A stretch of DNA of 64,000 nucleotides from Macrostomum lignano. Lineage: Eukaryota. The first letter of the stretch is position 1. Each line of letters starts with the position of its first letter. Made by a program: the position numbers and the translations under genes. The notes below the pieces were generated by a model that worked only from the letters and a program-made list of their open reading frames with translations, was not told where the DNA came from and did no database searches. Below are positions 19,844 through 58,425 of this stretch, piece after piece. The stretch covers positions 1 through 64,000 of the forward strand of contig NIVC01001505.1 in NCBI GenBank assembly GCA_002269645.1, in the 5' to 3' direction.

Positions 19844-20228
19844 TTCACTACCTATCCCCCATGAGTGCCAGTAATAACTGTTTATGTTTTGATTGCATTT
19901 CTCAAACTGCAACAAATTATTTGTAAAAAAAACATTTTTATTCGCGACCGATTGTTTCTATTTACGAGCTACATCCAAGGAATTGTTGATTGGCTCGTCT
20001 TAATTTGAATGCCAACTGTGTTACACGTACCGCTGTATCAAATATAAGATTCACATATGGTTTCAGTAGTTATCGGGTGCTGATGCGGAGTGTTTGTAGA
20101 CTGAGATAGCGATTCTTTAAATTTATTTTTATCAAAATTTACTTTTTTAGTTTTTTGTATTCCTGGGAGTATTCCTTTAGAAGTTATTGGTTACCGAGCA
20201 TGTCTTTTGGTGATTGTGTTGTCTGCCT

Positions 20229-20286
20229 ATTTATGTGTCCGTCTGTCTGCTGTCTGTCTGTCTGTCTTTGTGTCTGTCTGTCTTTG

Positions 20287-20323
<37 letters not shown>

Positions 20324-20342
20324 TTGTGTCTGTCTGTCTTTG

Positions 20343-20395
<53 letters not shown>
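20229..20395. repeat. (GTCT)n microsatellite upstream of the Speedy coding exon
   Basis: Direct. It ends shortly before a TTTAG| acceptor at 20417. Confidence 0.95.
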
Positions 20396-20484
20396 CAAGT
20401 CTAGACTTTTTCTTTAGATGCCCCTCAATCAAACACCCCCTTGCCCCGAACCTTCAGTGGCCGCTGTCCAGCTCTCTACTTGGC

Positions 20485-23102
20485 ATGCTGGCCAACGCTC
20501 GCAGTCGCGCCCTCTCCTTCGTCCGAGAATTCTTCGGCAACGACGAGGAGGAGGAGCAGCAGCAGCGAGGCGAGAACGGCAGCACCTCGGCGGAGATTCC
20601 GACATCGACCACGACTGCCACAGAGGCATCCACGGTGCCGAAGAAGCCGCCGGCCAGCTGCAGCACGGCATCGAGTGCCAGCTTGATCAAGCCGGTAGCC
20701 TGCAGAATCGACAGCACCGACCGGGACTTCGACGATGAGGATGACGACGGCGGCGCCGGCAGCGAGTCGAAGGTGTCGGCCGGCGACTTGACCCGCCGCC
20801 TGCATCACTATGGCAACCTGCTGGCCAAGGACTGCGTGATCCGGCAGTTCCTATTGGACGACTCCTGCCTGAGGCTGGCCGACCGGACTCTGCTGGCCAT
20901 CGCTTTCGTGTACTTCATCCGCTGCCGACTCAAACTCGGCGAGTACAATCGCAACAATTTCTTTGCCTGTCTGTGGCTGGCTCACGAGACCGAGGAGGAA
21001 TATGACAACCTGCGGCTGGCGCTCCTGCCCGCCTGGCTCGGCCGCCGCTGGACCCGGCTGTTGAAGCACGCTGGCAAGGCCAGGACTGAGTGAGGCGTTG
21101 TGCCGCACGGGATTGCTTGTTGTTAAAGGGCTTTTGGGGGAATTCGTTTTGTAGATTGCGGAGCAGATTTCTGTAGATTGGGCAGTAGATTTCTGTAGAT
21201 TGGGAGTAGATTTCTGTAGATTGGGAGTAGATTTCTGTAGATTGGGGAGTAGATTTCTGTAGATTGGGTAGTAGATTTCTGTAGATTGGGGAGTAGATTT
21301 CTGTAGATTGGGGAGTATATTTCTGTAGATTGGGGAGTATATTTCTGTAGATTGGGGAGTAGATTTCAGTAGATTGGGGAGTAGATTTATGTAGATTAGG
21401 GAGTAGATTTCAGTAGATTGGGGAGTAGATTTCTGTAGATTGGGGAGTATATTTCTGTAGATTGGGCAGTAGATTTCTGTAGATTGGGGATCGTAGATTT
21501 CTGTAGATTTGGGAGTAGATTTCTGTAGATTGGGCAGTAGATTTCTGTAGATTGGGGATCGTAGATTTCTGTAGATTTGGGAGTAGATTTCTGTAGATTG
21601 GGGAGTAGATTTCTGTAGATTGGGGAGTAGATTTCTGTAGATTGGGGAGTAGATTTCAGTAGATTTGGGAGTAGATTTCTGTAGATTGGGGAGCAGATTT
21701 CTGTAGATTGGGCAGTAGATTTCTGTAGATTGGGCAGTAGATTTCTGTAGATTGGGCAGTAGATTTCTGTAGATTGGGCAGTAGATTTCTGTAGATTAGG
21801 GAGTAGATTTCTGTAGATTGGGGAGTAGATTTCTGTAGATTGGGGAGTAGTTTTCTGTAGATTGGGGAGTAGATTTCTGTAGATTGGGGAGTAGATTTCT
21901 GTAGATTGGGGAGTAGTTTTCTGTAGATTGGGGAGTAGATTTCTGTAGATTGGGGAGTAGATTTCTGTAGATTGGGGAGTAGATTTCTGTAGATTGGGGA
22001 GTAGATTTCAGTAGATTTGGGAGTAGATTTCTGTAGATTGGGGAGCAGATTTCTGTAGATTGGGGAGTAGATTTCTGTAGATTGGGGAGTAGATTTCTGT
22101 AGATTGGGCAGTAGATTTCTGTAGATTGGGCAGTAGATTTCTGTAGATTTGGGAGTAGATTTCTGTAGATTTGGTAAAGTGGGGAGTAGATTTCTGTAGA
22201 TTGGGGAGTAGACTTCTGTAGATTGGGGAGTAGATTTCTGTAGATTGGGGAGTAGATTTCAGTAGATTAGGGAGTAGATTTCTGTAGATTGGGCAGTAGA
22301 TTTCTGTAGATTGGGCAGTAGATTTCTGTAGATTGGGCAGTAGATTTCTGTAGATTGGGCAGTAGATTTCTGTAGATTTGGGAGTAGATTTCTGTATATT
22401 TGGTAAAGTGGGGAGTAGATTTCTGTAGATTGGGGAGTAGACTTCTGTAGATTGGGGAGTAGATTTCTGTAGATTGGGCAGTAGATTTCTGTAGATTGGG
22501 AGTAGATTTCTGTAGATTTGGTAAAGTGTGGAGTAGAATGCGGATTTAGGAGTAGATGTGGACCCTCCGGTCTCTCCTGCAATTTTTGTTATGAATCCCC
22601 AATCTAGGTGGAAATTACTGTTAAAGAAAGAACTGCAGCAGTCTCAAAAAGCCACTCATAAAATCCTGTCAGGTTGTGGCGCCGCATGCGCTACCGCACG
22701 CTGGTCACGCGCAGTCAGTTGGCGCCAATTATGGCGCGCATCGAGCGCCACCTGCCTCACGTGGCCTGGCGGGAGCGGCCGTCGCCCGGGCCGCACCCGA
22801 CGGCTCTGAGGCGGCACCGACAGCCGTCGTTCAGCGCCGACTCGGAGTCCGGGCCGAACTGCGCCTGGTGTCGGCGAGATCAAAGGCCCGCGAATAGGAA
22901 ATCTGCTCAGCAGAAGTGCAAAAATCTGTCGCAAGAAACGGCGGAAAAAGAAGATGAAGAAGAGAAAGAGGTCACGCAGCAGCATCGAAGAAGCAACATC
23001 CGGCTGCGGCCGCTGCGCTATCGATCCATTATCGATCTGTCGTCCGACGAGGAACCGCCGCAGGCGAAACAGCCTCGCCGGTCTCGTCGCTTGCAGCACT
23101 GA
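20485..23102 (+). CDS. Speedy/RINGO-family CDK activator; exons 20485-21089 (may extend 5' to the acceptor at 20418) and 22673-23102
   Basis: The Speedy box DCVIRQFLLDDSCLRLADRTLLAIAFVYFIRCRLKLGEYNRNNFFACLWLAHETEEE is followed by GA|GTGAGG. It joins in phase 2 to GTCAG|G-LWRRMRYRTLVTRSQLAPIMARIERHLPHVAWRER, which matches the Speedy LWxRxxYRAxVSR...WxRER segment. Confidence 0.85.
21111..22530. repeat. 22-bp minisatellite (GTAGATTGGGGAGTAGATTTCT) x ~60, filling the Speedy intron
   Basis: Direct periodicity. Confidence 0.97.
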
Positions 23103-25318: not shown

Positions 25319-41011
<15,693 letters not shown>

Positions 41012-41934
41012 AAGCTGCTTAAATGATTGTGAGCGACAGTCATTGAGAGCCTACAATGCACCCTCTATTAGTAAACTATGCACTAAAGACGTTTGTTTTT
41101 CGTTTGAATTCGCCTTGCATTCCGTACTATCCAATCCTATTGTTTTTGTGTAAATTTTGCCAGTGCAAGGAAGGCACGATTAAAATCATTTGAGAATCTT
41201 TTATTATAAAAAATCATTGTCAAAAAACCTTTAAAAATATTCAATTTCAACACTTTCATTTCCTTCTCGTTTGGGTTTAAGCGTTTCATATTTTTAAGTA
41301 ATAAAATTCTCTATTTTCTAAATTTGGTACTGTTATCAGTAGTTTTTATCTAATTTTTCATACAAGTACTTAAGTCTCTGATATCCCTATTCATTACATG
41401 CTTAACACTCAGATTTACACCAGCCGTGCGTCTTACTTTATTGACCAAAAATGCGACTTACCTATGAAAGAAACAAGCAAAAATTTACGAATTTAGGTAA
41501 ACGACACGAGTAAATTTAGCTGTATTATTAAGGCAAAATGCCTCAGATATGTTCGTTGACAGCCAATCTCTTTAAATGAATTAAAATAAAAACCATTTTA
41601 AAAAATTTCCTCTTGGTTACGTTCTTACTTTCTGCAGTTTTTTTCTTGTTTTAGATTTAAGAAGACTATTTTTCATAATATATATTAAAATATTAAATAC
41701 ATCAGCGTACTCTAGTAACCTTAGTGCTCCGTTTAAAACTTATTTACGGCGGTTTTTGTCATTGACACGACTTGTCATTATATCGTCATTTTCTGTCTCT
41801 TCACTGAGTCTTCAGGGTTCACAGCCGGTCATCCGGTCTTCTGATGACTGACTGCTTTGACATTTTGCCGACAGTAAGAGTCTTTGAGCACGCGTGAATT
41901 AGGGCGGGTAGATTACTATGGATTAGGGGTTAGT

Positions 41935-43250
41935 TTTCTGTAGATTGCGGGTAGGTTTCTGTAGATTGCGGGTAGGTTTCTGTAGATTGCAGGTAGGTTT
42001 CTGTTGATTGGGGGTGGGTTTCTGTAGATTGGGGGTAGGTTTCTGTAGATTGGGGGTAGGTTTCTGTAGATTGGGGGTAGGTTTCTGTAGATTGGGAGTA
42101 GGTTTTTTTTGATTGGGGGTAGGTTTCTGTAGATTGGGGGTAGGTTTCTGTAGATTGGGTTAGTTTTCTGTAGATTGGGAGTAGGTTTCTTTTGATTGGG
42201 GGTAGGTTTCTGTAGATTGGGGGTAGGTTTCTGTAGATTGGGTTAGTTTTCTGTAGATTGGGAGTAGGTTTCTTTTGATTGGGGTAGGTTTCTGTAGATT
42301 GGGGTAGGTTTCTGTAGATTGGGAGTAGATTTCTGTAAATTGGGGTACATTAGGTTTCTGTAGAATGGGGGTAGGTATCTGTAGATTGGGATAGGTTTCT
42401 GTAGATTGGGGTAGGTTTCTGTAGATTGGGGGTAGGTTTCTGTAGATTGGGGGTAGGTTTCTGTAGATTGGGGGTAGGTTTCTGTAGATTGGGGGTAGGT
42501 TTCTGTTGATTGGGGGTAGGTTTCTGTAGATTGGGGGTAGGCTTCTGTAGATTGGGTTAGTTTTCTGTAGATTGGGAGTAGGTTTCTTTTGATTGGGGGT
42601 AGGTTTCTGTAGATTGGGGGTAGGTTTCTGTAGATTGGGTTAGTTTTCTGTAGATTGGGAGTAGGTTTCTTTTGATTGGGGGTAGGTTTCTGTAGATTGG
42701 GGTAGGTTTCTGTAGATTGGGAGTAGATTTCTGTAAATTGGGGTACATTAGGTTTCTGTAGAATGGGGGTAGGTATCTGTAGATTGGGATAGGTTTCTGT
42801 AGATTGGGGTAGGTTTCTGTAGATTGGGGGGTAGGTTTCTGTAGATTGGGGGTAGGTTTCTGTAGATTGGGTTAGTTTTCTGTAGATTGGGAGTAGGTTT
42901 CTTTTGATTGGGGGTAGGTTTCTGTAGATTGGGGTAGGTTTCTGTAGATTGGGAGTAGATTTCTGTAAATTGGGGTACATTAGGTTTCTGTAGAATGGGG
43001 GTAGGTATCTGTAGATTGGGGTAGGTTTCTGTAGATTGGGGTAGGTTTCTGTAGATTGGGGGGTAGGTTTCTGTAGATTGGGGGTAGGTTTCTGTAGATT
43101 GGGGGTAGGTTTCTGTAGATTGGGGGTAGGTTTCTGTAGATTGGGGGTAGGTTTCTGTTGATTGGGGGGTAGGTTTCTGTAGATTGAGGGTAGGTTTCTG
43201 TAGATTGGGGGGTAGGTTTCTGTAGATTGGGGGTAGGTTTCTGTTGTTTG
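41935..43250. repeat. 21-bp minisatellite (GTAGATTGGGGGTAGGTTTCT), paralogous to the Speedy intron array
   Basis: Direct. It is the source of the QSTETYP/NLQKPTP repeat ORFs. Confidence 0.96.
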
Positions 43251-44822: not shown

Positions 44823-47800
44823 TAAACCATGAGATAAGGATGGACAGGCAAGGGGGCAAACAAAGCGGCGTTTGGCGAGCAAAAGGCGGCAATAGCGCAA
44901 AGAAGCATTAAAGGGGGAGCAGCAAACGAACTCCCAACCCTAAAGAGGATAAGACAGTTAGTCAGAGTAGAGACGGGAGGAAAATTAAAAATGCGACACC
45001 ATCTGACCGACTGCCCGAGATTTGCAGTCGGGCGCTTCACACATTCAGAGCGCCAGTCACCCAGGGTCATGATATCAGGCAAGGCCACCCCCGCCTGTAG
45101 GGAAAAGCTGGCCCCACCGCGCCGCAGGCTGTGGCCAGAGAAGGCGGACGGGTTGAAACCGCAATTACGCAGAGCCTGCCGCAGAAGCGAGGTCAGCAGA
45201 CGAGGCTTCAAATGCAGCCTCCGCGAGCCCACGAGGTAGAACAACGGGACGGTGGCGCCGACGCGATTCTGGCGCAGGCGGCGCAACATCGCACTGACAG
45301 GGCACCAGGCCGCGCCGGCCAGGCAAGGCAGCTGCACCATGTGGACACGCTGGCCGAATTGGTTGGTCTTGGACCGCTGCAGCTGCAGCACCAGCCCGGA
45401 GCCGGAACAGGACAGATGGCTAGGGCGCAACTCGGCAGCTCCAGAGTCCAGCAGCAGGTCGCCAACTCGGATCAGCCCCCACCAAGCCATCAGCAAGGCG
45501 GCGCAGAATGGAGACCACAGGTTCGGGGCGAAGCCTCAACGGGCCGCAGGGTCGCCCGCAAGCCGCCGCAGGTGAGCGGGCTCGAGCGCCGTCGCCTGCT
45601 TGGTCTGAAGCCCCAGGAAGCGCCGAGCGCCCTCAAAAGGAACTGCAGCCGTGCCGCCCCTCGAGCTGGGTCTGGCGAGCCGGCCAGCTGGTGGAGCACC
45701 GAGACGGCATTGATGTAGGACCGCAGGGCTGAGAAGGCGCTAATTCGTGATTGCACCAGGTGGACGACGTACTGGCACAGGTCGCTTTCGCTGGCGGTGG
45801 TCGGACCGATGCCCGCCTGATCACAGAACGCACGCCAGGCCTTGAATTGGCTGCGGTAGGATTTGCAGGAGTTGTCTGCGAGGGCAAGGCGGCAGAGCAG
45901 ATATCGGTGGAGTCACTGCCTTCTGGGGCGACCTGAAAGCGGAGGGCGGCGCGAGAAGACACCGACAGCGCGTGCATGGCAAAATTGTCAGGCAAAAGGC
46001 AGATATGACCATAAAAACGAAAGCAAAAGTTAAGAATTCAGCACGAGAACCGAGCATACGAGACGCAGCGTCACTAAAAATTTGCATACGACCCGGCAGG
46101 TGATAAGTTTCAATACTAATACCATCACGAATGCACAACAAAGCCACAGTTTGATAGATCCGAAGGAGATCGGGATGACTGCAGGACAGGCGCTTTATCA
46201 TGCCGACAGCGGCGGTACTATCAGAGTATACCAAAACCTTGGTGTTGACTGTGCAGAGTGGAGCGAAACTTTAAAACCGTCAACAGCGGAGCCATGGCTT
46301 CGTTGAAATTTATGAGTAAATTCATAAACTGGCCATCGAAGTCTCTATCCCAATTGATGTACTCGTAGACCCAGTCAGTGAAGTTGAGGTCCTCAGAATG
46401 CCTGCCACACCTTCGGTGCAGCTGTCAGACTCAATCGCAGCGAGCTGCTCTTAGTTTGGCCATAGACTACTTACTAGGCGGCAACCAGGCCAGCGCTTTC
46501 CGCCACCAATCCAGATGCTTTTTTCAGCTCGGACGTAAGCACAGTTAGAGCCTTGCAGTCATAATCCATGGCGGTGATCAACGGCCGAAGGAAAGGCCGC
46601 AGCTGGCCATTGATTTGACACAGCCAGCCGAGCTTTCCCACCAGCTTCTGCATTGTCTTGAGGCGGATGGTCTGCGGTCTGGCCCAGACCGCAGTCCTGG
46701 CCCAGTCTCGCAGTCCTGGCCCAGAAAGCGCCACTTCAAGCCAGTAAGACGGTGGTCATTGGGACTGATGGCGACGGACCTGTAGGGATCTTTCAGATCC
46801 ACTTTGGCCATGAAGGAATCGGGCTTTAAAATGCTTTTTGAATTCTCGAACGGAGCCAAAACGGATGCCTTTTTCCTGCTGACAGTAGTCATTAACAGAG
46901 TCGGCGAGCGGAGCAGACAGATCGTGAACGAAGTGGACTTTCCCGTTGGCTTTAGGCAAGGCACCAATGAGGTTCACTTTCACAGGCTCCCGGGTAACGG
47001 TGTAGCGGCCTAGCCGAAGCTCATCCAGATGCTGAGCTTCCTCCTTGGCGGCATTCTGGCTAGCGGATGCGTAATTATCTCTCAGAGTAGTAATATTAGG
47101 TTGCTTATTATTAACCAGAAGAAAGTAATGAACGATAACATTCATCAAATACTGCTTGTCGGGGCCGTTATGCAGCAGCTTCTCCCAAGCAGAAGCCTTC
47201 AAATCACCAGCAGAGGAGTTAAAAGTGGCTTGAAGCAGAGGATTAAAAGCACTATAAAATTCATTCAGTTTTTTGTCTCCTGCATTGGCCGCGAGTCATC
47301 AGAACCGCGCTGGAGCAGCTGAGCAGGATGTTGGTGCTGATGGGCAGGATGCTGTCGCCCACAGCCCTTCACTTTGCAGATGTGGCGGTAAGAGCAGGAG
47401 GCTCTCTGGCAAACAGCAATGGCGTTGTAGCTGAGGCACACGGGCCGCGGGCTAGCAGGCTGGTCTTTGCTTTGGGGTAGGCGCACACTGGTTGGTGCGT
47501 GCAAATGCTTGTGATAGAGCTGAGGTGGCTCGCATCCCCACTGGCTCCCTGTGGAATCGTGCATGAGCTTGCGGTAATCCTCATCAAAATCCCAGACAGC
47601 GCTAGTCTCGTAGCCGGCACCGGCATCAAGAAGCTCTCCCACCTTCTTGGGTGTACTGCAGATATCCAAACAGGCCTTCAGTGTTGAGACTTCCATCACC
47701 ATTACTTCTAAGTAGGCTACCATCAGCAATCAGCCTGGACATGATCTCGGCGTTAGCAGCAATCCACTGGCCAACAGAAACTTTCCCTAGCGGCCACCAT

Positions 47801-48493: not shown

Positions 48494-49326
48494 TGGCAAA
48501 CCTCTGAACATGGCAGAGTAATGGACACATCATTGTGCAGGATGGGATTATCGGTCGGGAACAGCGGATCCGAGGACCACTAGAAGTTACCGTTGTGTGT
48601 TACCGTTAGTAACTTCTGTGGTCCTTTAAGTGGATCGAGAGGGTGTGGGGGGACAAAAATTATAATGAGGCCGTATATTTTACATGTAGGTTTGTGTAAG
48701 ATTTCCCTCGGGGTGATCTACTAATAGATTGTTTGCTTCTTTCCGTGGTCCCATCTGAGAGCAGTAATAATCCAGCTGCATGGTCTCTCCGAGAATCACT
48801 GTACCAAAATTTTAATGTGATTTTTTTTTAAATTAAAAATTTACGTGTATCTATACTGAATTGCAGTACATGTACATTCTATTTAACACACTTCAAATCT
48901 AAGTTATAAAAAATAAACTATTAAATTGACTGAAAAAACGCGAGACTATTAGAAAAGGCTGGGTAATAAAATTTATCTTCTAACAAAAGCAGTAAGGCTT
49001 GAGTCATACATGTAGATATACGATCGTGTGTTTATGTATACATGTAATTCCATAGACAAGCTAGCCACATGTAATTCCGATCTATAATTTACATGTATTA
49101 TTTAGTTTAAGCTCCACTTATAGTATAAAGTTCCACTGTGTATAGTTATACAACACAGTGGTCTTGTATTTAGTCTATCGCCGACTAAAATTCAGCTATG
49201 TACTCAACACTGCTCTACATATGTATGTAATAGCTATAGAACGGCAATAGTACTACGCCATGACTTTGGACTCCCGCGCGCACAGAAGTCCCCTGTTTTT
49301 TAGTACAACGGTTCAGCAGGGCAAGA

Positions 49327-50252
49327 GGGGGGTCGCTTTCATAAGACCGAAATTTCACAACGCCGAAAACTACTGCACGATCCTTCACAAGACCAAAACT
49401 TTATAAGACCGAAATTTCACAACGCCGAAAACTCAAAATGCAGGGCCCTTCACAAGACCGAAACTTCATAAGACCGAAGTTTCACAACGCCGAAAACTCA
49501 AAATGCAGAGCCATTCACAAGACCGAAACTTCATAAGACCGAAGTTTCACAACGCCGAAAACTCAAAATGCAGAGCCATTCACAAGACCGAAACTTCATA
49601 AGACCGAAGTTTCACAACGCCGAAAACTCAAAATGCATGGGGCCCTTCACAAGACCGAAACTTCATAAGACCGAAATTTCACAACGCCGAAAAATCGAAA
49701 TGCTCAGTAGCATTGCCACGTGGCCCACATATACTCATACAATGTATGCTGATGAAAATATGCTCATACGTTATCATATGTTATCAGCGAATCAATGGTT
49801 ATCAAATACTTGGCCTGTACACAAATGAAGCAAAAAAATCTTAAGGGTGCTAGAAAGGGTATTCGTCAAACTTCATAGCACGTTTGTGCATGGTGTATGT
49901 GATATGTGAATCCATTTGGTATTTCATAAGACGAACATAAACGTGAACCTACGTTAAAGAAAATAAATTTATTCAATAAAATGTCGTGAACAACAACTTG
50001 AGTACTTCGTATAGGTGAATTAACAAAGTGTTTCAATTGGTTTCTTCACCATAGGCCCGCGAAATTGTCAACGAGAGAGGACATTATGTACTATATGGCA
50101 TTTTATTTTATGCGGCCTTACGAAGTTTCGGTCTTGTGAAGGGCCCTGCATTTTGAGTTTTCGGCGTTGTGAAACTTCGGTCTTATGAAGTTTCGGTCTT
50201 GTGAAGTATGGTGTTTCGGCGTTGTGAAATTTCAGTCTTATGAAACCCCCCC
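49327..50252. mobile_element. ~925-bp MITE-like insertion with tandem subterminal repeats
   Basis: Arms GGGGGG(TCGC)TTTCATAAGACCGAAATTTCACAACGCCGAAA are inverted at the two ends. The element is absent from the paralogous position near 24780. TSD not resolved. Confidence 0.75.
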
Positions 50253-50708
50253 TTATGAAATCCCTCTCAAGGGGGTTATAATATTTCCTTCTTTCATTTG
50301 TTCATTGCCCGAAAGCATTTCATATCGACGATAAAGACTGTGATCGACGAGTACGATCGGAAGTCGTACGAAGAGTTCGGAGTCGTGCACGAGGTTTGGT
50401 CGCGGTAATCTAAATAAAACAAAATATTTAGAAACAAACTTTTCGCCTTAGGTTTACTAAGAGTAATTTTCCAGGTAATATACAACAAAATAAAAAATCT
50501 TGGCCATAAATGCAGGCAGTTCTAGTTATCTAAGATTCTATGTAGCGTACCTTTTTCGCTTTTTTGCAATTCGAAATTTCGATTTTTAAGCTAATTTTCA
50601 TTATAACATATTGCAGATTTAAAAGGTACAAATTGCCGTTTCACTGTATAAACTTGTATTGTAGGTGGCAAAAGATAGTACTCATCGCTCTATTATAAAT
50701 GAGAGCTG

Positions 50709-50754
50709 ATGGACGATCAATTGTTACCATCAATAAGCTTGTCTGTTTTTCTTG
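50709..50754 (+). CDS. Putative exon 1 of a second RNF213-like paralog (MDDQLLPSISLSVFL-g|GTAAGT)
   Basis: Differs from 25319-25370 (MDVDDQLVPSLSLSIFL-g|GTAAGT) by an in-frame 6-nt indel, one synonymous change and three conservative changes. The donor is conserved. No downstream exons in the window. Confidence 0.5.
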
Positions 50755-51075
50755 GTAAGTTTGTGGTCTGGTCTCTTCAGATTGTTATATTTATTAGCTT
50801 CCTCAAAGGTTGCGATTTCAGGGGCCGGTTTTAACCTGCTCTGTAATCGTGTTTAGCCGACGGGGCCGCCCCCTCCGCCCGTCTGTGCGTGCGGCCCGCG
50901 CGTGTGCATCCCTGCCGCAAGGTGGGGTGCTGGGTGCCGGCCGGCAGGCGGGGGTGTTGGGTTGGGGGTGGGCGGCGTCGGCCCCCTTTTATTTGTGCGC
51001 TCACGCTCTCTCGTGCGCGCTGCGAGAGCGCTTTGGCTCGTAAAATTTTTTTGCGACTATCTGGCTCTGGCTATC

Positions 51076-52092
51076 ATGCATCGTGTGGACCGACTAACAG
51101 TCAAACAACTCAAGAGTGAGCTGGGTAGCCGAGGCCTCTCAACCGCAGGCAATAAGTCGGCCTTGCAAGCCAGACTGAGACAACACGAGGGGCAGTCACA
51201 GCTTCAAGACGGCGGGACATCGGCATTGACATCGGCATCGGCATCGCCCTGTGCGCAGGAGGAGCTCCAAGACCAAGGCCGGTACCCACGGGAGGCGGAC
51301 CTGGACGGCGAGATTCGGCGGGCGCAGAAACGGCTGCAGCTCCTAGAGCTTCAAACACGCGAGCGAGAGCTTCGTGAACGCGCCGTCGTGACTGCTCGTA
51401 CAGAATCAGGTGAGCAGCAGAATCTTTTCGCTGAACTTATCAACCCAACAGGCCCCGTCAGCGCTAGAGCCAACCCCCGGCCGGTCGGGCAGCCGTGTCT
51501 ACTCGTCAGAGACTTTGTCGATGATCTGTCAGGCCAGGCTGACGAGCTGCTCACCAGGGGCAGCTCTGGCGGCCTCGTGCTCAAGAAGTCGACGACCAAG
51601 CTGGACGGCATGACAATTGGGCAGTGGTTCGCCGGCAGTATGAAGGTCCTGCTTCAGATACTTGAAGACACAGCGCCGCAGCTGACCAGCAAGGGCCAAG
51701 TGTACAGCACAACTGAGCAAGTCAAAGATTACGCCCAGTACAATGTCCAGGTGGCCGAGCTATTCGACAGATTCCCAGCGCACCGGGTGATCAGATTCGA
51801 CCATGACTACCGCCAGCACCGCGCAGCCAACAGCCTTCGCTGGGGCAAAGACTGCGCCCAGATGTCGATCAGGCACCTGCTCAGCATTAAGACGGACCAG
51901 TACAATCAGACAGCCAAGCGAAACCAGCCTAGCAACAAGAGCCGCGTCATGGGTCCGCGGACATCCTCAGGCCGCGAGCTGTGCTTGTCCTTCAACAGCA
52001 CCAACGGCTGCATGAGGAGCAACTGCCGATTCCTCCATGCCTGCCGAATCTGTGAGGGCAGCCACTCCGAGCAAAATCACGCAAAAAACTGA
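51076..52092 (+). CDS. Gag-like ORF1 of element A, 338 aa: N-terminal SAP domain, coiled coil, C-terminal CCCH plus CxxC-H fingers
   Basis: RLTVKQLKSELGSRGLSTAGNKSALQARL fits the SAP consensus. C-terminal CLSFNSTNGCMRSNCRFLHACRICEGSH. Confidence 0.88.
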   Translation: MHRVDRLTVKQLKSELGSRGLSTAGNKSALQARLRQHEGQSQLQDGGTSALTSASASPCAQEELQDQGRYPREADLDGEIRRAQKRLQLLELQTRERELRERAVVTARTESGEQQNLFAELINPTGPVSARANPRPVGQPCLLVRDFVDDLSGQADELLTRGSSGGLVLKKSTTKLDGMTIGQWFAGSMKVLLQILEDTAPQLTSKGQVYSTTEQVKDYAQYNVQVAELFDRFPAHRVIRFDHDYRQHRAANSLRWGKDCAQMSIRHLLSIKTDQYNQTAKRNQPSNKSRVMGPRTSSGRELCLSFNSTNGCMRSNCRFLHACRICEGSHSEQNHAKN

Positions 52093-54728
52093 GCAAGCGC
52101 GCCGACACGGCGCGCGAAACCGATTTTACCCCTCCTGCTTTTAACTGCCTCGCTCAGCCCGCTCCCGTGCCCTGCATCGTCAAGCCTCCAGTGCGGATGT
52201 CCGATCTGACGCAGCCAGTGGGCGATCTCTGCATCGACGCCTGGCGCTCCGAGCTTGTGGGCGACCCCGACGCTGATTTTATTCTCGACGGCATCGAGAG
52301 CGGCTTCTCCATTGTCGATGACTTCGACTTTACGCCGTGTCTCTGCAGCAACTACCAGTCCGTCAACCGGAATCGCGACCAAGTCCAAGCTGTTATCGGT
52401 GAAGAAATCCGGCTCGGGAGGTACGTCCCAGTCGTGGACAAGCCTGCGATGGTCTGTCCGCTGGGAGCCATTCCGAAAGACAGCTCCGGCATCCGGCTAA
52501 TCCATGATTGCTCCGTCCCTCGCGGCTGCAGCCTGAACGATCACTATGCCCAACAACGGCGTCTCCGCTTCACCTCCGTCGACGAGGCCGTCAGGATGAT
52601 GCAGCCCGGCTGGTTTATGGCAAAGGTGGACATCGCGTCAGCCTACCGCAGCGTGCCAATTTCTCCGCAGTGCTACCAAGCCACCGGCATCCACTGGGAC
52701 TTCGGCAATGGCTGCTCAACCTTCCTGGTGGATACGCGGTTACCATTCGGCAGCAGAGCCTCCGTCAGCATTTTCCATCGCCTCACGCAAGCGGCCCGGC
52801 GAATGATGTGTCGCAAGGGGTTCCTGGCAACCGTCGTTTTCATCGATGACTTCCTCGTCATGGCCAGGACGAAAGCCGAGTGTGACAGGGCCTACCACGA
52901 GCTGCGCAACCTGCTCACCAGGCTTGGCTTCACCATCAACGAGAAAAAGTCGGTGCCGCCGACGACAAAGCTGCGATTCCTCGGCATTGACATCGACACC
53001 GTGCAAGCCAGTCTTTCCTTCCCAGCCGACAAAGCCGAAAAGCTTCAGCTTCTCCTTGACACCTGCCTCTCGCGGAGGAGCCTGTGCAAGGCGGAACTGC
53101 AGAAGCTGCTCGGGCACCTCAGCCACTTGTGCACTGCCGCCCAGCACGGGCGAACTTTCCTGCGGCCGCTGATCGAACTGGTCAACAGCCTGGCGCATCC
53201 GTCCGACAGGGTCGGCGTCACGGAGGAGCTCCAGTCGCAGCTGAGGTGGTGGATGACCGCGTTGAGCACGCTGCCGCCTAGAGCTGCCTGGCCCTCGCGT
53301 CGGCCGGCTGGTGCGATTGAGTCTGACGCCTGTGACATTGGAGGCGGTGCTGTGCTGCATTTCGTCGACAGAGAACCGGTTTGGCTCTACATCGACTGGC
53401 AGTCCGACTGTGATGGCGCGTTCAAGGAGCTGCACATCAACCTCAAGGAGTGCGCCGCCCCGCTGGTTGCGATTCTGCAGCACCAAGAAGCCTTCAGCGG
53501 CTGCTCGGTTGCAGTCTACACTGACAGCACCGCCGCCTGCGGCATCATTAACTCGGGTTCCGCCAAGCACCAAGGTATTGCCGACCTGCAGAAGCGCGTC
53601 GCCCTGACCTGCATTCAACGCGACATCATCGTCCGCGCGCACCATGTGCCTGGCCGCTTCCAGCTGCTCGCAGACCCGCTGTCCAGAGCGCATGACCCCA
53701 GCCAGCTTGCCAACTTTCTGTTTCGCTTCTATGGCACCTGCTATGTGCCAACCAGCTTGCTTGCCTCCGCTTGCTTGAGCTCTGCCGCTGCCTCCCACCT
53801 TCTGTTTCAGGTCCGCCTCCTGTGGTCCCGGGTCCCGGCCTCTCCGCACCGGCACGTCGACTGCTCAGCCAAGGCTTCGCCAGCTCAACTCGCTCCGCCT
53901 ACGCCAGCCAGTGCGCGTCCTGGATGCGATTCTGCGCCGCCCACAGACTTCAACCGCTGTCAGCGCAGCCCGCCGACGTGTGCAACTACCTGGCGGAGCT
54001 GGCGAACAACCGGCTGTTCTCAGTCAGCAGCCTATCCTGCCACCTCGCCGCCGTGTCTTGGCTCTACAAATCAAACAGCGTGGCTGACCCGACGAGGCAG
54101 CCACTGGTTCAGCTTGCCCTGCGCGGCGCCCGCCGGCTCCTCGGCGCCGCCCCAAGGAGCAAACGAGCGTTGCGGCCGGCCGACCTGCAGCGGCTGCACG
54201 GCGTGCTGCGACCTGAAGAGCCCAGGGACTGCGCATTCTGGTGCGCCTGCATCGTGGGCTGGTGGGCCATGCTACGGCGAGCCAACCTGTGCGTATCCGG
54301 CCGGTTCGATCCGCAGCGAGACCTCAGTGCGAGCTGCATCCGGCCGTCAAGGGCGGGCGTCATCCTCGTCATTCCGAGGTCGAAGACCAACCAGTTCGGG
54401 GCGCGCCAGCACCGAGTTTTCTTGCCGCAGCTCCCAGACGGACATCCACTCTGCCCGGTCACCGCGCTCCAGAAGCAGCTGCGCATTAACCGACCGCAGG
54501 ACGCCCAGCATCACTTGTTCAGTACCCGAACCAGACGGTCCACCGCACCGCTCACCGCGCGCACCTTCGCGAGGCGCCTGTCCGCGGCACTTCGACAGGC
54601 CGGGTTCGCCGAGCCAGCCAGGTTCTCTGGGCACTCGTTGCGTCGAGGTGGCGCTACATCCGCGGCGGAGGCCGGCATCCCCATCGATTCAATCATGCGA
54701 GTCGGTGACTGGGCAAGCAGCGCTGTAG
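52089..54728 (+). CDS. Reverse transcriptase / RNase H ORF2 of element A, in the -1 frame relative to gag (track ORF 52167-54728)
   Basis: RT motifs IRLIHDCS, MAKVDIASAYRSV, LPFGSRASVSIF, VVFIDDFL and FLGIDID. RNase H motifs IESDAC, HINLKE, VYTDSTAA and LADPLSR. The frame is open from the gag stop region onward. Confidence 0.92.
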   Translation: MSKRADTARETDFTPPAFNCLAQPAPVPCIVKPPVRMSDLTQPVGDLCIDAWRSELVGDPDADFILDGIESGFSIVDDFDFTPCLCSNYQSVNRNRDQVQAVIGEEIRLGRYVPVVDKPAMVCPLGAIPKDSSGIRLIHDCSVPRGCSLNDHYAQQRRLRFTSVDEAVRMMQPGWFMAKVDIASAYRSVPISPQCYQATGIHWDFGNGCSTFLVDTRLPFGSRASVSIFHRLTQAARRMMCRKGFLATVVFIDDFLVMARTKAECDRAYHELRNLLTRLGFTINEKKSVPPTTKLRFLGIDIDTVQASLSFPADKAEKLQLLLDTCLSRRSLCKAELQKLLGHLSHLCTAAQHGRTFLRPLIELVNSLAHPSDRVGVTEELQSQLRWWMTALSTLPPRAAWPSRRPAGAIESDACDIGGGAVLHFVDREPVWLYIDWQSDCDGAFKELHINLKECAAPLVAILQHQEAFSGCSVAVYTDSTAACGIINSGSAKHQGIADLQKRVALTCIQRDIIVRAHHVPGRFQLLADPLSRAHDPSQLANFLFRFYGTCYVPTSLLASACLSSAAASHLLFQVRLLWSRVPASPHRHVDCSAKASPAQLAPPTPASARPGCDSAPPTDFNRCQRSPPTCATTWRSWRTTGCSQSAAYPATSPPCLGSTNQTAWLTRRGSHWFSLPCAAPAGSSAPPQGANERCGRPTCSGCTACCDLKSPGTAHSGAPASWAGGPCYGEPTCAYPAGSIRSETSVRAASGRQGRASSSSFRGRRPTSSGRASTEFSCRSSQTDIHSARSPRSRSSCALTDRRTPSITCSVPEPDGPPHRSPRAPSRGACPRHFDRPGSPSQPGSLGTRCVEVALHPRRRPASPSIQSCESVTGQAAL

Positions 54729-54799
54729 AGCGGTACCTACCGCCTTCGGTTGAGCGCGGTGCGCCGCTGCGCCTGGCTTCACTCCTCCCCTCAGCGTGA
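53771..54799 (+). CDS. Tyrosine recombinase ORF3 of element A; no ATG before the conserved N-terminal domain
   Basis: Catalytic set intact: RRANL (R), RSKTNQ (K), HSLRRGG (HxxR), GDW...ERYL (W, Y). N-terminal STRSAY...WMRFC core-binding region. Confidence 0.93.
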   Translation: MLELCRCLPPSVSGPPPVVPGPGLSAPARRLLSQGFASSTRSAYASQCASWMRFCAAHRLQPLSAQPADVCNYLAELANNRLFSVSSLSCHLAAVSWLYKSNSVADPTRQPLVQLALRGARRLLGAAPRSKRALRPADLQRLHGVLRPEEPRDCAFWCACIVGWWAMLRRANLCVSGRFDPQRDLSASCIRPSRAGVILVIPRSKTNQFGARQHRVFLPQLPDGHPLCPVTALQKQLRINRPQDAQHHLFSTRTRRSTAPLTARTFARRLSAALRQAGFAEPARFSGHSLRRGGATSAAEAGIPIDSIMRVGDWASSAVERYLPPSVERGAPLRLASLLPSA

Positions 54800-55662
54800 C
54801 CTCCTCCCTGGTTTGGGATTTTTGGACTCGTTTCGTCCGCTGCCTTTGTCGCCACGCCTGTGCCTTCCCTCTTGCTGCTTTTGGCCCTGTTGGCTAAGGT
54901 TGCGATTTCAGGGGCCGGTTTTAACCTGCTCTGTAATCGTGTTTAGCCGACGGGGCCGCCCCCTCCGCCCGTCTGTGCGTGCGGCCCGCGCGTGTGCATC
55001 CCTGCCGCAAGGTGGGGTGCTGGGTGCCGGCCGGCAGGCGGGGTGTTGGGTTGGGGGTGGGCGGCGTCGGCCCCCTTTTATTTGTGCGCTCACGCTCTCT
55101 CGTGCGCGCTGCGAGAGCGCTTTGGCTCGTAAAATTTTTTTTATTAATTTTCTTGTAATGCTTTTATTCCGTTGCTTCGTGACTTCCCTTTTAATCGCCT
55201 CAAATCCTAAAATATATTCGCTATCGCAGGACTCGTTTCGTCCGCTGCCTTTGTCGCCACGCCTGTGCCTTCCCTCTTGCTGCTTTTGGCCCTGTTGGCT
55301 AATAGAAATTATGTTGTTTGCCATTTTCAGGACAGTAGTTTTATTTTATTGAAATCCTAGATAAATAATCTCATTGTTCCTGTACAAATAAATAGTCTAT
55401 GACCTAGGCTAGGTATAACTATAAGTATAAGTAGCATATGAAGTTTTAGATTTGCACTTTTAATTTAGACTAGAATTTAAATTTCGAAGATAGGATAGGA
55501 TTTTTAGGATCTTTACTAGCAATCTTCGCCCCCCGTTGGGGGACATCTATATAGAATCTCTGTTCTCGACAAGTAAGTAACAAAAAAATAGCGAAATAAA
55601 GCCTTCACAAAGAAAACAGACAAAATACTCAAATGAAGTGCAATGTAAAAAGAAATCATCGC

Positions 55663-55935
55663 AAGACAGCAAGCATCCCCCAGATAGCAAGCATCCCCCA
55701 GATAGCAAGCATCCCCCAGATAGCAAGCATCCCCCAGATAGCAAGCATCCCCCAGATAGCAAGCATCCCCCAGATAGCAAGCATCCCCCAGATAGCAAGC
55801 ATCCCCCAGATAGCAAGCATCCCCCAGATAGCAAGCATCCCCCAGATAGCAAGTATCCCCCAGATAGCAAGCATCCCCCAGATAGAAAGCATCCCCAAGA
55901 TAGATAGCATCCCCAAATAGCAAGCATCCACCAGA
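55663..55935. repeat. 18-bp minisatellite (CAGATAGCAAGCATCCCC) x ~15; degenerate copy at ~61655-61865
   Basis: Direct. Confidence 0.95.
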
Positions 55936-56019
55936 CAATAAGTAGCTAGTGCGACAATTTCTTTAGCATTATAGCGGCTCTTTTAAAATTCGCTTACTTT
56001 TACGTTTGAAATTGTGTAT

Positions 56020-58425
56020 ATTTTATGTTTAACAGGGTGGCTCTTTTATGTTCTACATTGTGGCTCTTTTTTGTTCAACATGGTAACTCTTTTATGTTTG
56101 ATACGGTGGCTTCCAATGTCTGACATGGTGGCTCTTCTATGTTTGACATGGTGGCGCATTAATGCTCGACATGGTGGCTCTTTACTGTTTGACATGGTGG
56201 CTCTTTAATGTTCTACATTAAGGCTCTTTAATGTTCTACATTGTGCTCTTTAATATTTGACATTGTGGCTCTTTAATGTTCGACAGGGTGGCTCTTTAAT
56301 GTTTGACATGGAGTCACGTATGTGTTAGACATGGAGTCATGTATATATTTGGCATGGAGTCACATATATGCTTTACATGGTGGCTCTTTAATGTTTGACA
56401 TGTTGGCTCTTTAATGTGTGACATGGTGGCTCTTTAATGTTTGCCATGGAGTCATGTATATATTTGGCATGGAGTCACGTATATGTTTGACATGGTGGCT
56501 CTTTAATGTTTGACATAGTGGCTCTTTAATGTTTGACATGGTGGCTCTTTTATGTTTGACATGATGGCTCTTTAATGTTCGACATGGTGGCTGTTTAATG
56601 TTTGTTATGGAGTCATATGTATATGTTTTACATGGTGGCTCTTTTATGTGTGACATGGAGTCACGTATATATTTGACATGGAGTCACATATATGTTTGAC
56701 ATGGTGGCTCTTTAGTGTTCGATATGGTGGCTCTTTAATGTTTGACATGGTGGCTCTTTAATGTTAGACATGGTGGCTCTTTAATGTTTGACATGGTGGC
56801 TCTTTAATGTTTGACATGGTGGCTCTTTTATGTTTGACATGGTGGCTCTTTAATATTTGACATGGTGGCTCTTTAATGTTCAACATTGTGGCTCTTTAAT
56901 GTTCTACATGGTGGTTCTTTAATATTTGACATGGTGGCTCTTTAATGTTCAACATTGTGGCTCTTTAATGTTCAACATGGTGGCTCTTTATTGTTTGACA
57001 TGATGGCTCTTTAATGTTCGACATGGTGGCTCTTTTATGTTTGACATGGTGGCTCTTTAATATTTGACATGGTGGCTCTTTAATGTTCAACATTGTGGCT
57101 CTTTAATGTTCAACATGGTGGCTCTTTATTGTTTGACATGATGGCTCTTTAATGTTAGACATGGTGGCTCTTTAATGTTCGACATGGTGGCTCTTTATTG
57201 TTCGAAATTGTGGCTCTTTAATGTTCTACATGGTGGCTCTTTAATGCTCTACATTGTGGCTCTTTAATGCTCTACATTGTGGCTCTTTAATGTTCTACAT
57301 TGTGGCTCTTTAATCTTCGACATGGTGGCTCTTTAATGTTTGACATTGTGGCTCTTTATTGTTTGACGTGATGGCTTTTTAATGTTTGACATCATGGCTC
57401 TTAAATGTTCTACATTGTGGCTTTTTAATGTTCTACATTGTGGCTCTTTAATGTTTGACATGGTGGCTCTTTAACGTTCGACAGGGTGGCTCTTTAATGT
57501 TTGACATGGAGTCACGTATGTGTTAGACATGGAGTCATGTATGTATTTGGCATGGAGTCACGTATATGTTTGACATGGTGGCTCTTTAATGTTTGACATA
57601 GTGGCTCTTTAATGTTTGACATAGTGGCTCTTTAATGTTTGACATAGTGGCTCTTTAATGTTTGACATCGTGGCTCTTTAATGTTTGACATGGTGGCTCT
57701 TTTATGTTTGACATGATGGCTCTTTAATGTTCGACATGGTGGCTGTTTAATGTTTGTTATGGAGTCATATGTATATGTTTTACATGGTGGCTCTTTTATG
57801 TGTGACATGGAGTCACGTATATATTTGACATGGAGTCACATATATGTTTGACATGGTGGCTCTTTAGTGTTCGATATGGTGGCTCTTTAATGTTTGACAT
57901 GGTGGCTCTTTAATGTTTGACATAGTGGCTCTTAATTTTTTACTTGGTGGCTCTTTAATGTTTGACATGGTTGCTCCTTACTATATGACATGGTGGCTCT
58001 TTAATGTTTGACATGGAGTCACGTATGTGTTTGACATGGAGTCACGTATATATTTGGCATGGAGTCACGTAAATGCTTTACATGGTGGCTCTTTATGTTC
58101 GACAAAGAGTCATAAGTATATGTTTTACATGGTGGCTCTTTTATGTTTGACATGGAGTCACGTATATGTTTGACATGTAGTCACGTATGTGTTTGACATG
58201 GAGTCACGTATATATTTGACATGGAGTCACGTAAATGCTTTACATTGTGGCTCTTTATGTTCGACAAAGAGTCATAAGTATATGTTTGACATGGTGGCTC
58301 TTTAATGTTTGACATGGTGGCTTTTTAGTGTTTGACATGGTGGCTCTTTAATGTTTGACATGGTGGCTCTTTAATGTTCAACATGGTGGCTCTTCTATGT
58401 TTGACATTGTGCCTCTTTTATGTTT
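56020..58425. repeat. 23-bp minisatellite (TTTGACATGGTGGCTCTTTAATG, with a GACATGGAGTCACGTATAT variant), ~100 units
   Basis: Direct. Confidence 0.96.

What the first reader, a model, noticed from the sequence alone, without database searches (positions are those of the whole stretch)
52083..52115. Textbook -1 ribosomal frameshift signal linking gag to RT/RNase H, conserved in both elements
Seen: element A gag ends GCA AAA AAC TGA, giving heptamer A-AAA-AAC at 52083-52089. A 7-nt spacer follows, then a perfect 7-bp GC stem-loop GCGCGCC-GACAC-GGCGCGC (52097-52115). The -1 frame runs without stops into RT, predicting a ~1,217-aa Gag-RT-RH fusion. Element B independently ends ACA AAA AAC TGA (47274-47265, - strand), and its -1 frame also runs open into RT, though I see no clear hairpin there. 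Established: A AAA AAC plus a downstream structure 5-9 nt away drives -1 frameshifting at MMTV and HTLV gag-pro. Inference: these YR retrotransposons set the Gag:Pol ratio by programmed frameshifting. With the splice above, one transcript would yield three proteins.
Basis: partly seen in the sequence, partly recalled or inferred. Interest (0 to 1): 0.85.

Follow-up and report, generated by a model that had tools for sequence, protein, structure and literature searches.

The report
Gag-pol frameshift site in Ngaro retrotransposon
An apparently intact Ngaro-type jumping gene in this animal-like genome carries the classic "slippery" sequence A-AAA-AAC plus a hairpin at the end of gag, and the same signal at the same spot in about two dozen distant relatives makes it very likely that reverse transcriptase is made as a Gag-Pol fusion by ribosomal frameshifting, a known trick in a little-studied element family.

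Summary
A 7-nt spacer follows, then a perfect GC hairpin at 52097-52115 (-15.3 kcal/mol). The -1 frame is open from 52056 into RT/RNase H.

Element A (50806-55302) is an apparently intact Ngaro-type tyrosine-recombinase retrotransposon with split direct repeats. Element B is a decayed copy of a different family (28-40% aa identity) with the same heptamer and stop, and no hairpin.

Comparative evidence is strong:
- 22 of 81 related loci from other assemblies, plus a hemichordate genome copy, carry exactly A6-C in gag register in the gag/pol overlap.
- 24 of the 28 AAAAAAC in 87 kb sit at that spot.
- The site is spread over several deep pol clades.
- Only 4 of 24 have a Met between the site and the conserved pol N-terminus.
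- Other relatives use a conserved UUU_CGU (+1) motif or a single in-frame stop. Gag-Pol recoding therefore looks like the family strategy.
- A downstream hairpin is strong in A and its closest relative but absent in about half of the loci.

Verdict: a real and almost certainly functional -1 frameshift signal, a new member of a known kind. No experiment was done, and the predicted 1,217-aa product is doubtful past RNase H.

The parts
50806..51052 (+). Split direct repeat A1 (5' end of element A)
   Evidence: families D8/D9. 50806-51052 repeats at 54896-55141 with 96-100% identity.
51076..52092 (+). gag ORF (338 aa from the first ATG) with an N-terminal SAP domain and a C-terminal CCCH-like knuckle; ends AAA AAC TGA
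   Evidence: SAP PF02037 E = 2e-12 at aa 63-96 of the 396-aa ORF. C-x8-C-x4-C-x3-H was read from the translation.
52083..52089 (+). Slippery heptamer A_AAA_AAC in gag register (proposed -1 shift site)
   Evidence: It is the only in-register X_XXY_YYZ in gag and RT/RH. It is conserved in 22 relatives plus L085.
52090..52096 (+). 7-nt spacer; its first three bases are the gag stop codon UGA
52097..52115 (+). GC hairpin, 7-8 bp with a 3-5-nt loop, -15.3 kcal/mol (proposed stimulator)
   Evidence: It is the only perfect >=7-bp hairpin in element A and falls in the top 0.6% of 30-nt windows. The closest relative, L001, has a different GC stem after the same 7-nt spacer.
52056..53810 (+). pol reading frame (-1 relative to gag): linker, reverse transcriptase and RNase H. 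The frame itself stays open to 54728.
   Evidence: RVT_1 E = 3e-16; RT_RNaseH E = 7e-4; 329 homologues, the best 43-45% identical.
53771..54799 (+). Tyrosine recombinase ORF (-1 relative to pol), with no ATG before its conserved domain
   Evidence: Phage_integrase, SAM-like domains.
54824..55302 (+). 3' repeat block: B1 54824-54897, A2 54896-55141, B2 55229-55302
   Evidence: D8, D9; D11 is 100% identical.
47265..47274 (-). Element B: heptamer A_AAA_AAC (47274-47268) followed by TGA (47267-47265) at the end of a gag remnant
   Evidence: The gag remnant ORF is 47265-47729.
45002..47241 (-). Element B pol and YR remnants, broken into at least 5 frame pieces (decayed copy, 28-44% aa identity to A)
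   Evidence: tblastn of A proteins against the window.

Best explanation
Element A is an apparently intact Ngaro-type tyrosine-recombinase retrotransposon. Its full-length RNA is translated from the gag AUG at 51076.

Most ribosomes stop at UGA 52090 and make Gag (338 aa). A minority slip one base backwards when AAA (Lys) is in the P site and AAC (Asn) in the A site of A_AAA_AAC (52083-52089). Both tRNAs re-pair on AAA_AAA. Translation then continues with CUG 52089 in the -1 frame into RT/RNase H, giving a Gag-Pol fusion (...NHAKN-LSKRAD...).

The 8-bp GC hairpin 7 nt downstream would sit at the mRNA entrance of the ribosome at that moment. It probably raises the slip rate in this element.

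Shown: the anatomy, and the deep conservation of the exact heptamer, its register and its position.
Inferred: that slippage happens, its efficiency, and the role of the hairpin.
For: Anatomy:
- The heptamer is in gag register inside a 37-nt overlap.
- It is the only such heptamer in gag and RT/RH.

Conservation:
- A_AAA_AAC in register lies in the gag/pol overlap of 22 of 81 related loci plus both window elements.
- A Glandiceps talaboti genome copy reads CCA AAA AAC TAG, with a 477-codon gag.
- 24 of the 28 AAAAAAC on the coding strand of 87 kb are at this spot. The run is always exactly A6 followed by C, and is preceded by C in 23 of 24.
- The site occurs in several deep pol clades.

No alternative entry to pol:
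- Only 4 of 24 loci have a Met between the site and the conserved W..EL..D.D pol motif.
- In A, 10 other ATG triplets precede ATG 52197, which has C at -3 and T at +4.

Family context:
- Sister lineages place pol behind gag through a conserved UUU_CGU in the +1 frame (9 loci, one clade).
- Others use a single in-frame stop (about 17 loci, plus Clytia, Oculina and L084).
- One has a direct fusion (L037).
- A C-terminal extension of Gag is therefore the common theme.

Negative control: pol->YR overlaps show no enrichment of heptamers (3 of 40).

Hairpin:
- It is unique in the element.
- L001 has an unrelated GC stem after the same 7-nt spacer (-19.5 to -22.9 kcal/mol, better than all controls).
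- 11 of 24 loci are at or below the 10th percentile for a 30-nt downstream window.

Literature: A_AAA_AAC is among the shiftiest heptamers for mammalian ribosomes (PMC5009743).
Against: - No expression, ribosome or protein data were available.
- Downstream structure is absent in about half of the relatives and in element B. With 50-nt windows the family as a whole shows no excess (mean z -0.05), and A's window is only at the 13th percentile.
- Some relatives with a long gag and pol in the -1 frame lack any canonical heptamer (L046, L052, L073).
- In A alone, Met 52197 lies upstream of the conserved pol domain, so internal initiation would not remove conserved sequence.
- The hosts of most comparison loci are unknown, and some loci are related pairs (L010/L076, L030/L077).
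Confidence: 0.8

Rival explanations
1. Transcriptional slippage. RNA polymerase II, or reverse transcriptase over replication cycles, adds one A in the A6 run. A subset of RNAs then carries gag and pol in one frame, and the ribosome does not slip.
For: The site is a homopolymer run. One relative, L037, has gag and pol fused in one ORF through an A8 run at the equivalent place.
Against: - The run is exactly six A in 24 of 24 loci, is always followed by C, and always lies in the X_XXY_YYZ register. Polymerase slippage needs neither the register nor the C and would favour longer runs.
- A6 is short for appreciable Pol II slippage (general knowledge).
- Sister clades use non-homopolymer signals at the same junction, UUU_CGU or a stop codon.
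Confidence: 0.05
2. Pol is made independently of Gag, by initiation at ATG 52197 (IRES, reinitiation after the gag stop) or from a spliced or subgenomic RNA. The heptamer would then be incidental.
For: - In A, an in-frame ATG (52197) lies 12 codons upstream of the conserved pol motif.
- The YR ORF seems to need something other than a canonical heptamer, so the element may also use splicing.
Against: - 20 of 24 heptamer-bearing relatives have no Met between the site and the conserved pol domain.
- ATG 52197 has a poor context and is preceded by 10 ATG triplets.
- This reading does not explain the conservation of the exact heptamer and register.
- A short P-P/A-F-N/S motif, encoded between the heptamer and ATG 52197, recurs in B, L001, Saccoglossus P0040 and, in the gag frame, in readthrough-type relatives. 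This point is weak.
Confidence: 0.07
3. The copy is dead and the arrangement is a relic or coincidence with no present function in this genome.
For: Element B is clearly decayed. No expression data exist for A.
Against: - A has intact gag, RT/RH and YR ORFs.
- Its terminal repeats are 96-100% identical, as expected for a recent insertion.
- The signal is conserved across the family whatever the state of this copy.
Confidence: 0.05

Closest known systems
Retroviral gag-pro -1 frameshift sites on A_AAA_AAC (MMTV, HTLV-1/2, BLV) and the astrovirus ORF1a/1b site
   Same: - Identical heptamer.
- A spacer of about 7 nt followed by a stable 3' structure.
- A structural protein extended into replication enzymes at a set ratio.
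(Own knowledge; the shiftiness of A_AAA_AAC is in PMC5009743.)
   Different: - The downstream ORF is RT/RNase H of a tyrosine-recombinase retrotransposon, with no protease and no DDE integrase.
- The stimulator here is a simple short-loop hairpin, as in astrovirus or HTLV, not the MMTV pseudoknot.
- In many relatives no structure is detectable.
- The gag stop codon directly abuts the heptamer in A, B, L001, L011, L016, L017, L057 and L085.
Gag-pol recoding in LTR retrotransposons (Ty1/Ty3 +1, many Ty3/gypsy and BEL -1, some readthrough)
   Same: One element family mixes -1 frameshift, +1 frameshift, stop readthrough and direct fusion at the gag/pol junction.
   Different: This is a different order of retroelements, the YR/DIRS order. 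The library search found no paper describing gag/pol recoding signals for it.
Ngaro superfamily of YR retrotransposons (Ngaro1 of zebrafish and relatives)
   Same: - gag, RT/RH and YR in that order.
- Split direct repeats A1...B1-A2-B2.
- No methyltransferase.
- Overlapping ORFs (descriptions in PMC3783388 and PMC9210276).
   Different: - Published descriptions I could read say only that the ORFs overlap.
- Poulter & Butler 2015, as quoted in PMC13003380, propose frameshifting for the YR ORF, not a defined gag/pol signal.
- The Gag here carries a SAP domain.
Influenza A PA-X and amalgavirus +1 frameshift motif UUU_CGU / UUU_CGN
   Same: A sister clade of nine related elements has an invariant CCN CCN CGK UUU CGU in the gag/pol overlap, with pol in the +1 frame. 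The core matches UCC_UUU_CGU of PA-X (PMC3498833) and UUU_CGN of amalgaviruses (PMC5052127).
   Different: This concerns relatives, not the window's elements. It is a retrotransposon rather than an RNA virus, and it is untested.

Membership tests
Canonical eukaryotic -1 programmed ribosomal frameshift signal | X_XXY_YYZ heptamer in the register of the upstream (0) frame | tested here: met
   A_AAA_AAC at 52083-52089, with AAA and AAC as gag codons.
Canonical eukaryotic -1 programmed ribosomal frameshift signal | The -1 frame is open across the heptamer and continues into a long coding ORF | tested here: met
   The -1 frame is open from 52056 and carries RT and RNase H domains.
Canonical eukaryotic -1 programmed ribosomal frameshift signal | Stable RNA structure 5-9 nt downstream | tested here: met
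   - Element A: 7-nt spacer and an 8-bp GC hairpin of -15.3 kcal/mol, unique in the element.
- Family-wide the result is inconclusive: 11 of 24 loci at or below the 10th percentile for 30-nt windows, no excess with 50-nt windows, none in element B.
- Pseudoknots were not searched with a dedicated tool.
Canonical eukaryotic -1 programmed ribosomal frameshift signal | Phylogenetic conservation of the shift site beyond amino-acid constraint | tested here: met
   The exact A6-C sits in the same register in 22 relatives, both window elements and L085, at 35-45% pol identity. 24 of 28 AAAAAAC occurrences are at the junction.
Canonical eukaryotic -1 programmed ribosomal frameshift signal | Measured frameshifting, or a detected transframe protein | not testable with these tools
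   Needs reporter assays, ribosome profiling or mass spectrometry.
Ngaro-type YR retrotransposon | Encodes RT/RNase H and a tyrosine recombinase, in the order gag, RT/RH, YR | tested here: met
   Pfam RVT_1, RT_RNaseH, Phage_integrase and SAM-like domains in consecutive ORFs.
Ngaro-type YR retrotransposon | Split direct repeats (A1 ... B1 A2 B2) | tested here: met
   A1 50806-51052 and A2 54896-55141; B1 54824-54897 and B2 55229-55302.
Ngaro-type YR retrotransposon | No methyltransferase domain, no protease, no DDE integrase | tested here: met
   No such Pfam hits in any ORF of element A at E <= 0.01.
DIRS1-type YR retrotransposon | Inverted terminal repeats with an internal complementary region, and a methyltransferase domain after RNase H | tested here: not met
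   The repeats flanking element A are direct, not inverted. The inverted repeats at 49319-50252 lie outside the element. No MT domain was found.
Rfam frameshift elements | Match to a curated frameshift-stimulating RNA family | tested here: not met
   No Rfam hit at E <= 1 in 50700-55400.

The most novel reading that the evidence does not exclude
Ngaro-type tyrosine-recombinase retrotransposons of marine invertebrates would be a single family in which Gag-Pol expression has switched repeatedly between three recoding mechanisms at one junction.

- An ancestral -1 shift on C-A_AAA_AAC, often with the gag stop abutting it and often without any detectable structure.
- One clade that replaced it with the influenza PA-X / amalgavirus type +1 motif UUU_CGU.
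- Clades using UGA/UAG readthrough, including UGA-CUA and UGA-CUC contexts.

That would be the first defined recoding signals for the YR retroelement order, and the first cellular or retrotransposon use of the UUU_CGU +1 site.
Probability: 0.45. Interest if true: 0.65.

Novelty: new member of a known kind. Interest (0 to 1): 0.5.

Why it matters
- It gives the poorly studied YR (DIRS/Ngaro) retrotransposons a concrete, testable rule for how RT is expressed and how the Gag:Pol ratio is set.
- It should improve annotation. Gene callers split or mis-splice these ORFs; for example, the Oculina and Saccoglossus models fuse gag and pol artificially.
- The family offers a natural comparative series for asking what replaces a downstream structure as stimulator. 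It includes the same heptamer with and without a hairpin, an abutting stop codon, and a conserved 5' C.
- It also shows how lineages swap -1, +1 and readthrough solutions.
- The mechanism itself is textbook, so the single-site finding is confirmatory rather than surprising.

Tried and rejected
The hairpin loop is 3-5 nt, and no GUGUC complement to the loop lies downstream. The MFE of 52083-52200 adds only an outer helix that includes the stop codon (z = -1.7). I rejected an H-type pseudoknot, but ran no dedicated pseudoknot predictor.
- Family-wide structure with 50-nt and 70-nt windows. No excess or a marginal one. Only the compact 30-nt test shows enrichment.
- Rfam. No hit.
- Second frameshift for YR. 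There is no in-register heptamer at 53700-54000 in A and no enrichment in 40 relatives. I rejected a canonical -1 PRF there.
- Literature. Goodwin & Poulter 2004 and Poulter & Butler 2015 are not held. I could not check whether they already mention a gag/pol frameshift. Eight full-text searches found no description of it.
- Close relatives for nucleotide covariation of the hairpin. None exist in the databases; the best pol hit is 43-45% identical, so covariation could not be tested.
- Host identification. I got only as far as eukaryotic and probably metazoan context, from a Spy1/RINGO domain ORF and a 3,040-aa AAA ATPase ORF.
Full report
**1. What is in the sequence**

The + strand at 52081-52092 reads GCA AAA AAC TGA in the frame of the ORF that ends at 52092. 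The positions are:
- heptamer A_AAA_AAC, 52083-52089
- gag stop UGA, 52090-52092
- spacer, 52090-52096 (7 nt)
- hairpin GCGCGCC-GACAC-GGCGCGC, 52097-52115

ViennaRNA folds the hairpin as 8 bp with a 3-nt loop, -15.3 kcal/mol alone and -16.7 in context. The -1 frame has a stop at 52053-52055 and is then open to 54728. The heptamer therefore sits in a 37-nt overlap.

**2. What the elements are**

Pfam finds these domains in consecutive ORFs:
- a SAP domain in Gag
- RVT_1 and RT_RNaseH in the -1 ORF
- Phage_integrase with SAM-like domains in ORF 53771-54799

The element is bounded by split direct repeats:
- A1 50806-51052 and A2 54896-55141, 96-100% identical
- B1 54824-54897 and B2 55229-55302, 100% identical

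This is the Ngaro arrangement, not the inverted repeats of DIRS1, and there is no methyltransferase. All three ORFs are intact, so A looks like a recent insertion.

Element B is only 28-44% identical to A at the protein level. Its pol is broken into at least five frame pieces. It is a decayed copy of a different family.

The surrounding window is eukaryotic and probably metazoan. It holds a Spy1/RINGO domain ORF and a 3,040-aa AAA ATPase ORF.

**3. Is it more than chance?**

Within A:
- The heptamer is the only in-register X_XXY_YYZ in 338 gag codons, and none occurs in RT/RH.
- The hairpin is the only perfect >=7-bp hairpin with a 3-8-nt loop in 4.5 kb.
- Its 30-nt window is in the best 0.6% of the element's windows.
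- A coarser 50-nt comparison is unimpressive, at the 13th percentile.

**4. Comparative test**

The pol has 329 homologues at E <= 1e-10. The best are 43-45% identical: a Logan contig and Macrostomum lignano. Others come from corals, Clytia, Saccoglossus and Glandiceps. I fetched 81 related loci and four genome loci.

In 22 of the 81 loci, A_AAA_AAC lies in gag register in the gag/pol overlap with pol in the -1 frame. The Glandiceps talaboti copy reads CCA AAA AAC TAG after a 477-codon gag.

Across the 87 kb of the 24 loci that carry the site:
- AAAAAAC occurs 28 times on the coding strand, 24 of them at this junction.
- It occurs 7 times on the other strand.
- The run is always exactly six A followed by C.
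- It is preceded by C in 23 of 24.

A rough NJ tree puts these loci in several deep clades. The closest relative, L001, ends gag with TCA AAA AAC TAG. It then has a 7-nt spacer and an unrelated GC stem, CGGCCGG...CCGGCCG.

**5. Alternatives for entering pol**

- Only 4 of 24 loci have any Met between the heptamer and the conserved pol motif (aW..EL..D.D..FlL.Gi..GF).
- In A, the candidate ATG 52197 has C at -3 and T at +4. It is the eleventh ATG triplet downstream of the gag start.
- Transcriptional slippage would not need the register, the 3' C or a fixed run length, yet all three are invariant.
- The single counter-example is L037, where gag and pol are fused through an A8 run.

**6. Family context**

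Nine loci form one clade with pol in the +1 frame. All nine carry CCN CCN CGK UUU CGU in the overlap. This core matches the PA-X site UCC_UUU_CGU (PMC3498833) and the amalgavirus UUU_CGN motif (PMC5052127).

About 17 loci have gag and pol in one frame separated by a single UGA or UAG. So do these copies:
- Clytia hemisphaerica (UGA CUC)
- Oculina patagonica (UGA CUC)
- L084 (UGA CUA G)

The junction always lies 15-57 codons upstream of the conserved pol motif (for the 24 heptamer loci). Expression of pol as a C-terminal extension of Gag by recoding therefore looks like the family rule. About 22 loci stay unresolved because they are truncated, decayed or lack a canonical signal; L046, L052 and L073 are examples.

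**7. The hairpin as stimulator**

For 30-nt windows starting 4 nt after the heptamer:
- 11 of 24 loci fall at or below the 10th percentile of their own locus.
- 5 of 24 fall at or below the 5th percentile (binomial p = 0.006).
- B, L054 and L058 have essentially no structure.

The hairpin is plausible as a stimulator in A and L001, but it is not a defining feature of the family. No Rfam family matches.

**8. The C-terminus of the fusion**

RT/RH homology ends near 53810. Beyond that point the pol frame overlaps the YR ORF, which is -1 relative to pol, for 918 nt and encodes P/S/A/R-rich sequence.

In about 45 relatives pol stops within 3-300 nt of the RNase H end. Only A and L001 keep the frame open across the YR ORF (a third locus, L050, also runs on, but there YR is in the same frame as pol). 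Synonymous-codon shuffles of the YR ORF show that this is unlikely by chance: P = 0.0002 for A and 0.008 for L001. I have no explanation for it.

The pol/YR junction has no canonical heptamer in A and no enrichment in 40 relatives. Many relatives show a polypyrimidine tract followed by YAG there. In A this is ccaccttctgtttcag|g, ending at 53811. The YR ORF has no ATG before its conserved domain. The predicted 1,217-aa product is therefore arithmetically right but biologically uncertain.

**9. Prior knowledge**

- Papers I could read describe Ngaro ORFs only as overlapping (PMC3783388, PMC9210276).
- Poulter & Butler 2015, as quoted in PMC13003380, propose frameshifting for the YR ORF.
- The large recoding review PMC5009743 does not mention DIRS, Ngaro or tyrosine recombinase in the 300,000 characters held. 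It lists A_AAA_AAC among the shiftiest heptamers.
- The two primary Ngaro sources are not held, so prior mention cannot be excluded.

**10. Verdict**

The signal is real and deeply conserved, and I judge it very likely functional as a -1 frameshift site (0.8). It is a new member of a well-known kind. The mechanism is textbook. The added value is that it defines Gag-Pol recoding for the YR retroelement order and exposes switches to +1 and readthrough in sister lineages.

Noticed in passing
Related loci L002, L008, L009, L012, L014, L019, L021, L027, L074 (sites at 1275, 1191, 1282, 1151, 1837, 1052, 1284, 1161, 1005): One clade of related Ngaro-like elements has pol in the +1 frame. All nine carry an invariant CCN CCN CGK TTT CGT (Gag PPRFR) in the gag/pol overlap. 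The core UUU_CGU is the +1 frameshift motif of influenza PA-X and amalgaviruses.
   Followed up: partly
L003, L005, L006, L015, L018, L020, L022, L029, L032, L040, L041, L043, L048, L049, L051, L059, L061; L082 (Clytia) 2845; L083 (Oculina) 4408; L084 2453: In these relatives gag and pol are in the same frame, separated by a single TGA or TAG. The contexts include TGA CTA G and TGA CTC. This is a stop-codon readthrough arrangement at the same junction.
   Followed up: partly
L037 1242-1249: gag and pol are fused in one ORF through a run of eight A where relatives have A6-C. This could be a real fusion, a homopolymer sequencing error or a slippage product.
   Followed up: no
window 53811-54728 (and L001 1906-2656): The pol frame stays free of stops for about 300 codons across the YR ORF, in A and in its closest relative only (one other locus, L050, runs on, but with YR in the same frame). 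Synonymous shuffles of the YR ORF give P = 0.0002 and 0.008. This suggests stop avoidance or dual coding.
   Followed up: partly
window 53771-53880: The YR ORF is -1 relative to pol and has no ATG before its conserved domain. No slippery heptamer lies in the overlap. A polypyrimidine tract plus CAG|G ends at 53811 and looks like a 3' splice site. Similar YAG motifs occur at pol ends in relatives.
   Followed up: partly
window 51262-51363 and about 51990-52050: Gag of element A has a SAP DNA-binding domain (PF02037, E = 2e-12) and a C-terminal C-x8-C-x4-C-x3-H knuckle just upstream of the shift site. Similar knuckles precede the recoding site in the relatives.
   Followed up: no
24 heptamer loci, position -1 of the heptamer: The base before A_AAA_AAC is C in 23 of 24 loci (codon NCA). 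This may be an E-site or context effect on frameshifting.
   Followed up: no
window 41906-43208, 55592-55968, 55973-58000, 49319-50252: Minisatellite arrays of 21-nt, 18-nt and 23-nt units flank the two elements. A 65-nt repeat array between them (49319-49704) has an inverted partner at 50113-50252.
   Followed up: no
window 31787-40909 (+) and 20155-21093 (+): There is an uninterrupted 3,040-aa ORF with dynein-type AAA ATPase domains, and an ORF with a Spy1/RINGO cell-cycle domain. This is eukaryotic host context.
   Followed up: no
P0017, P0062 (Oculina), P0040 (Saccoglossus): Public gene models join gag and pol of these elements into single proteins. Automated annotation evidently bridges the recoding site with artificial introns or frame corrections.
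   Followed up: no
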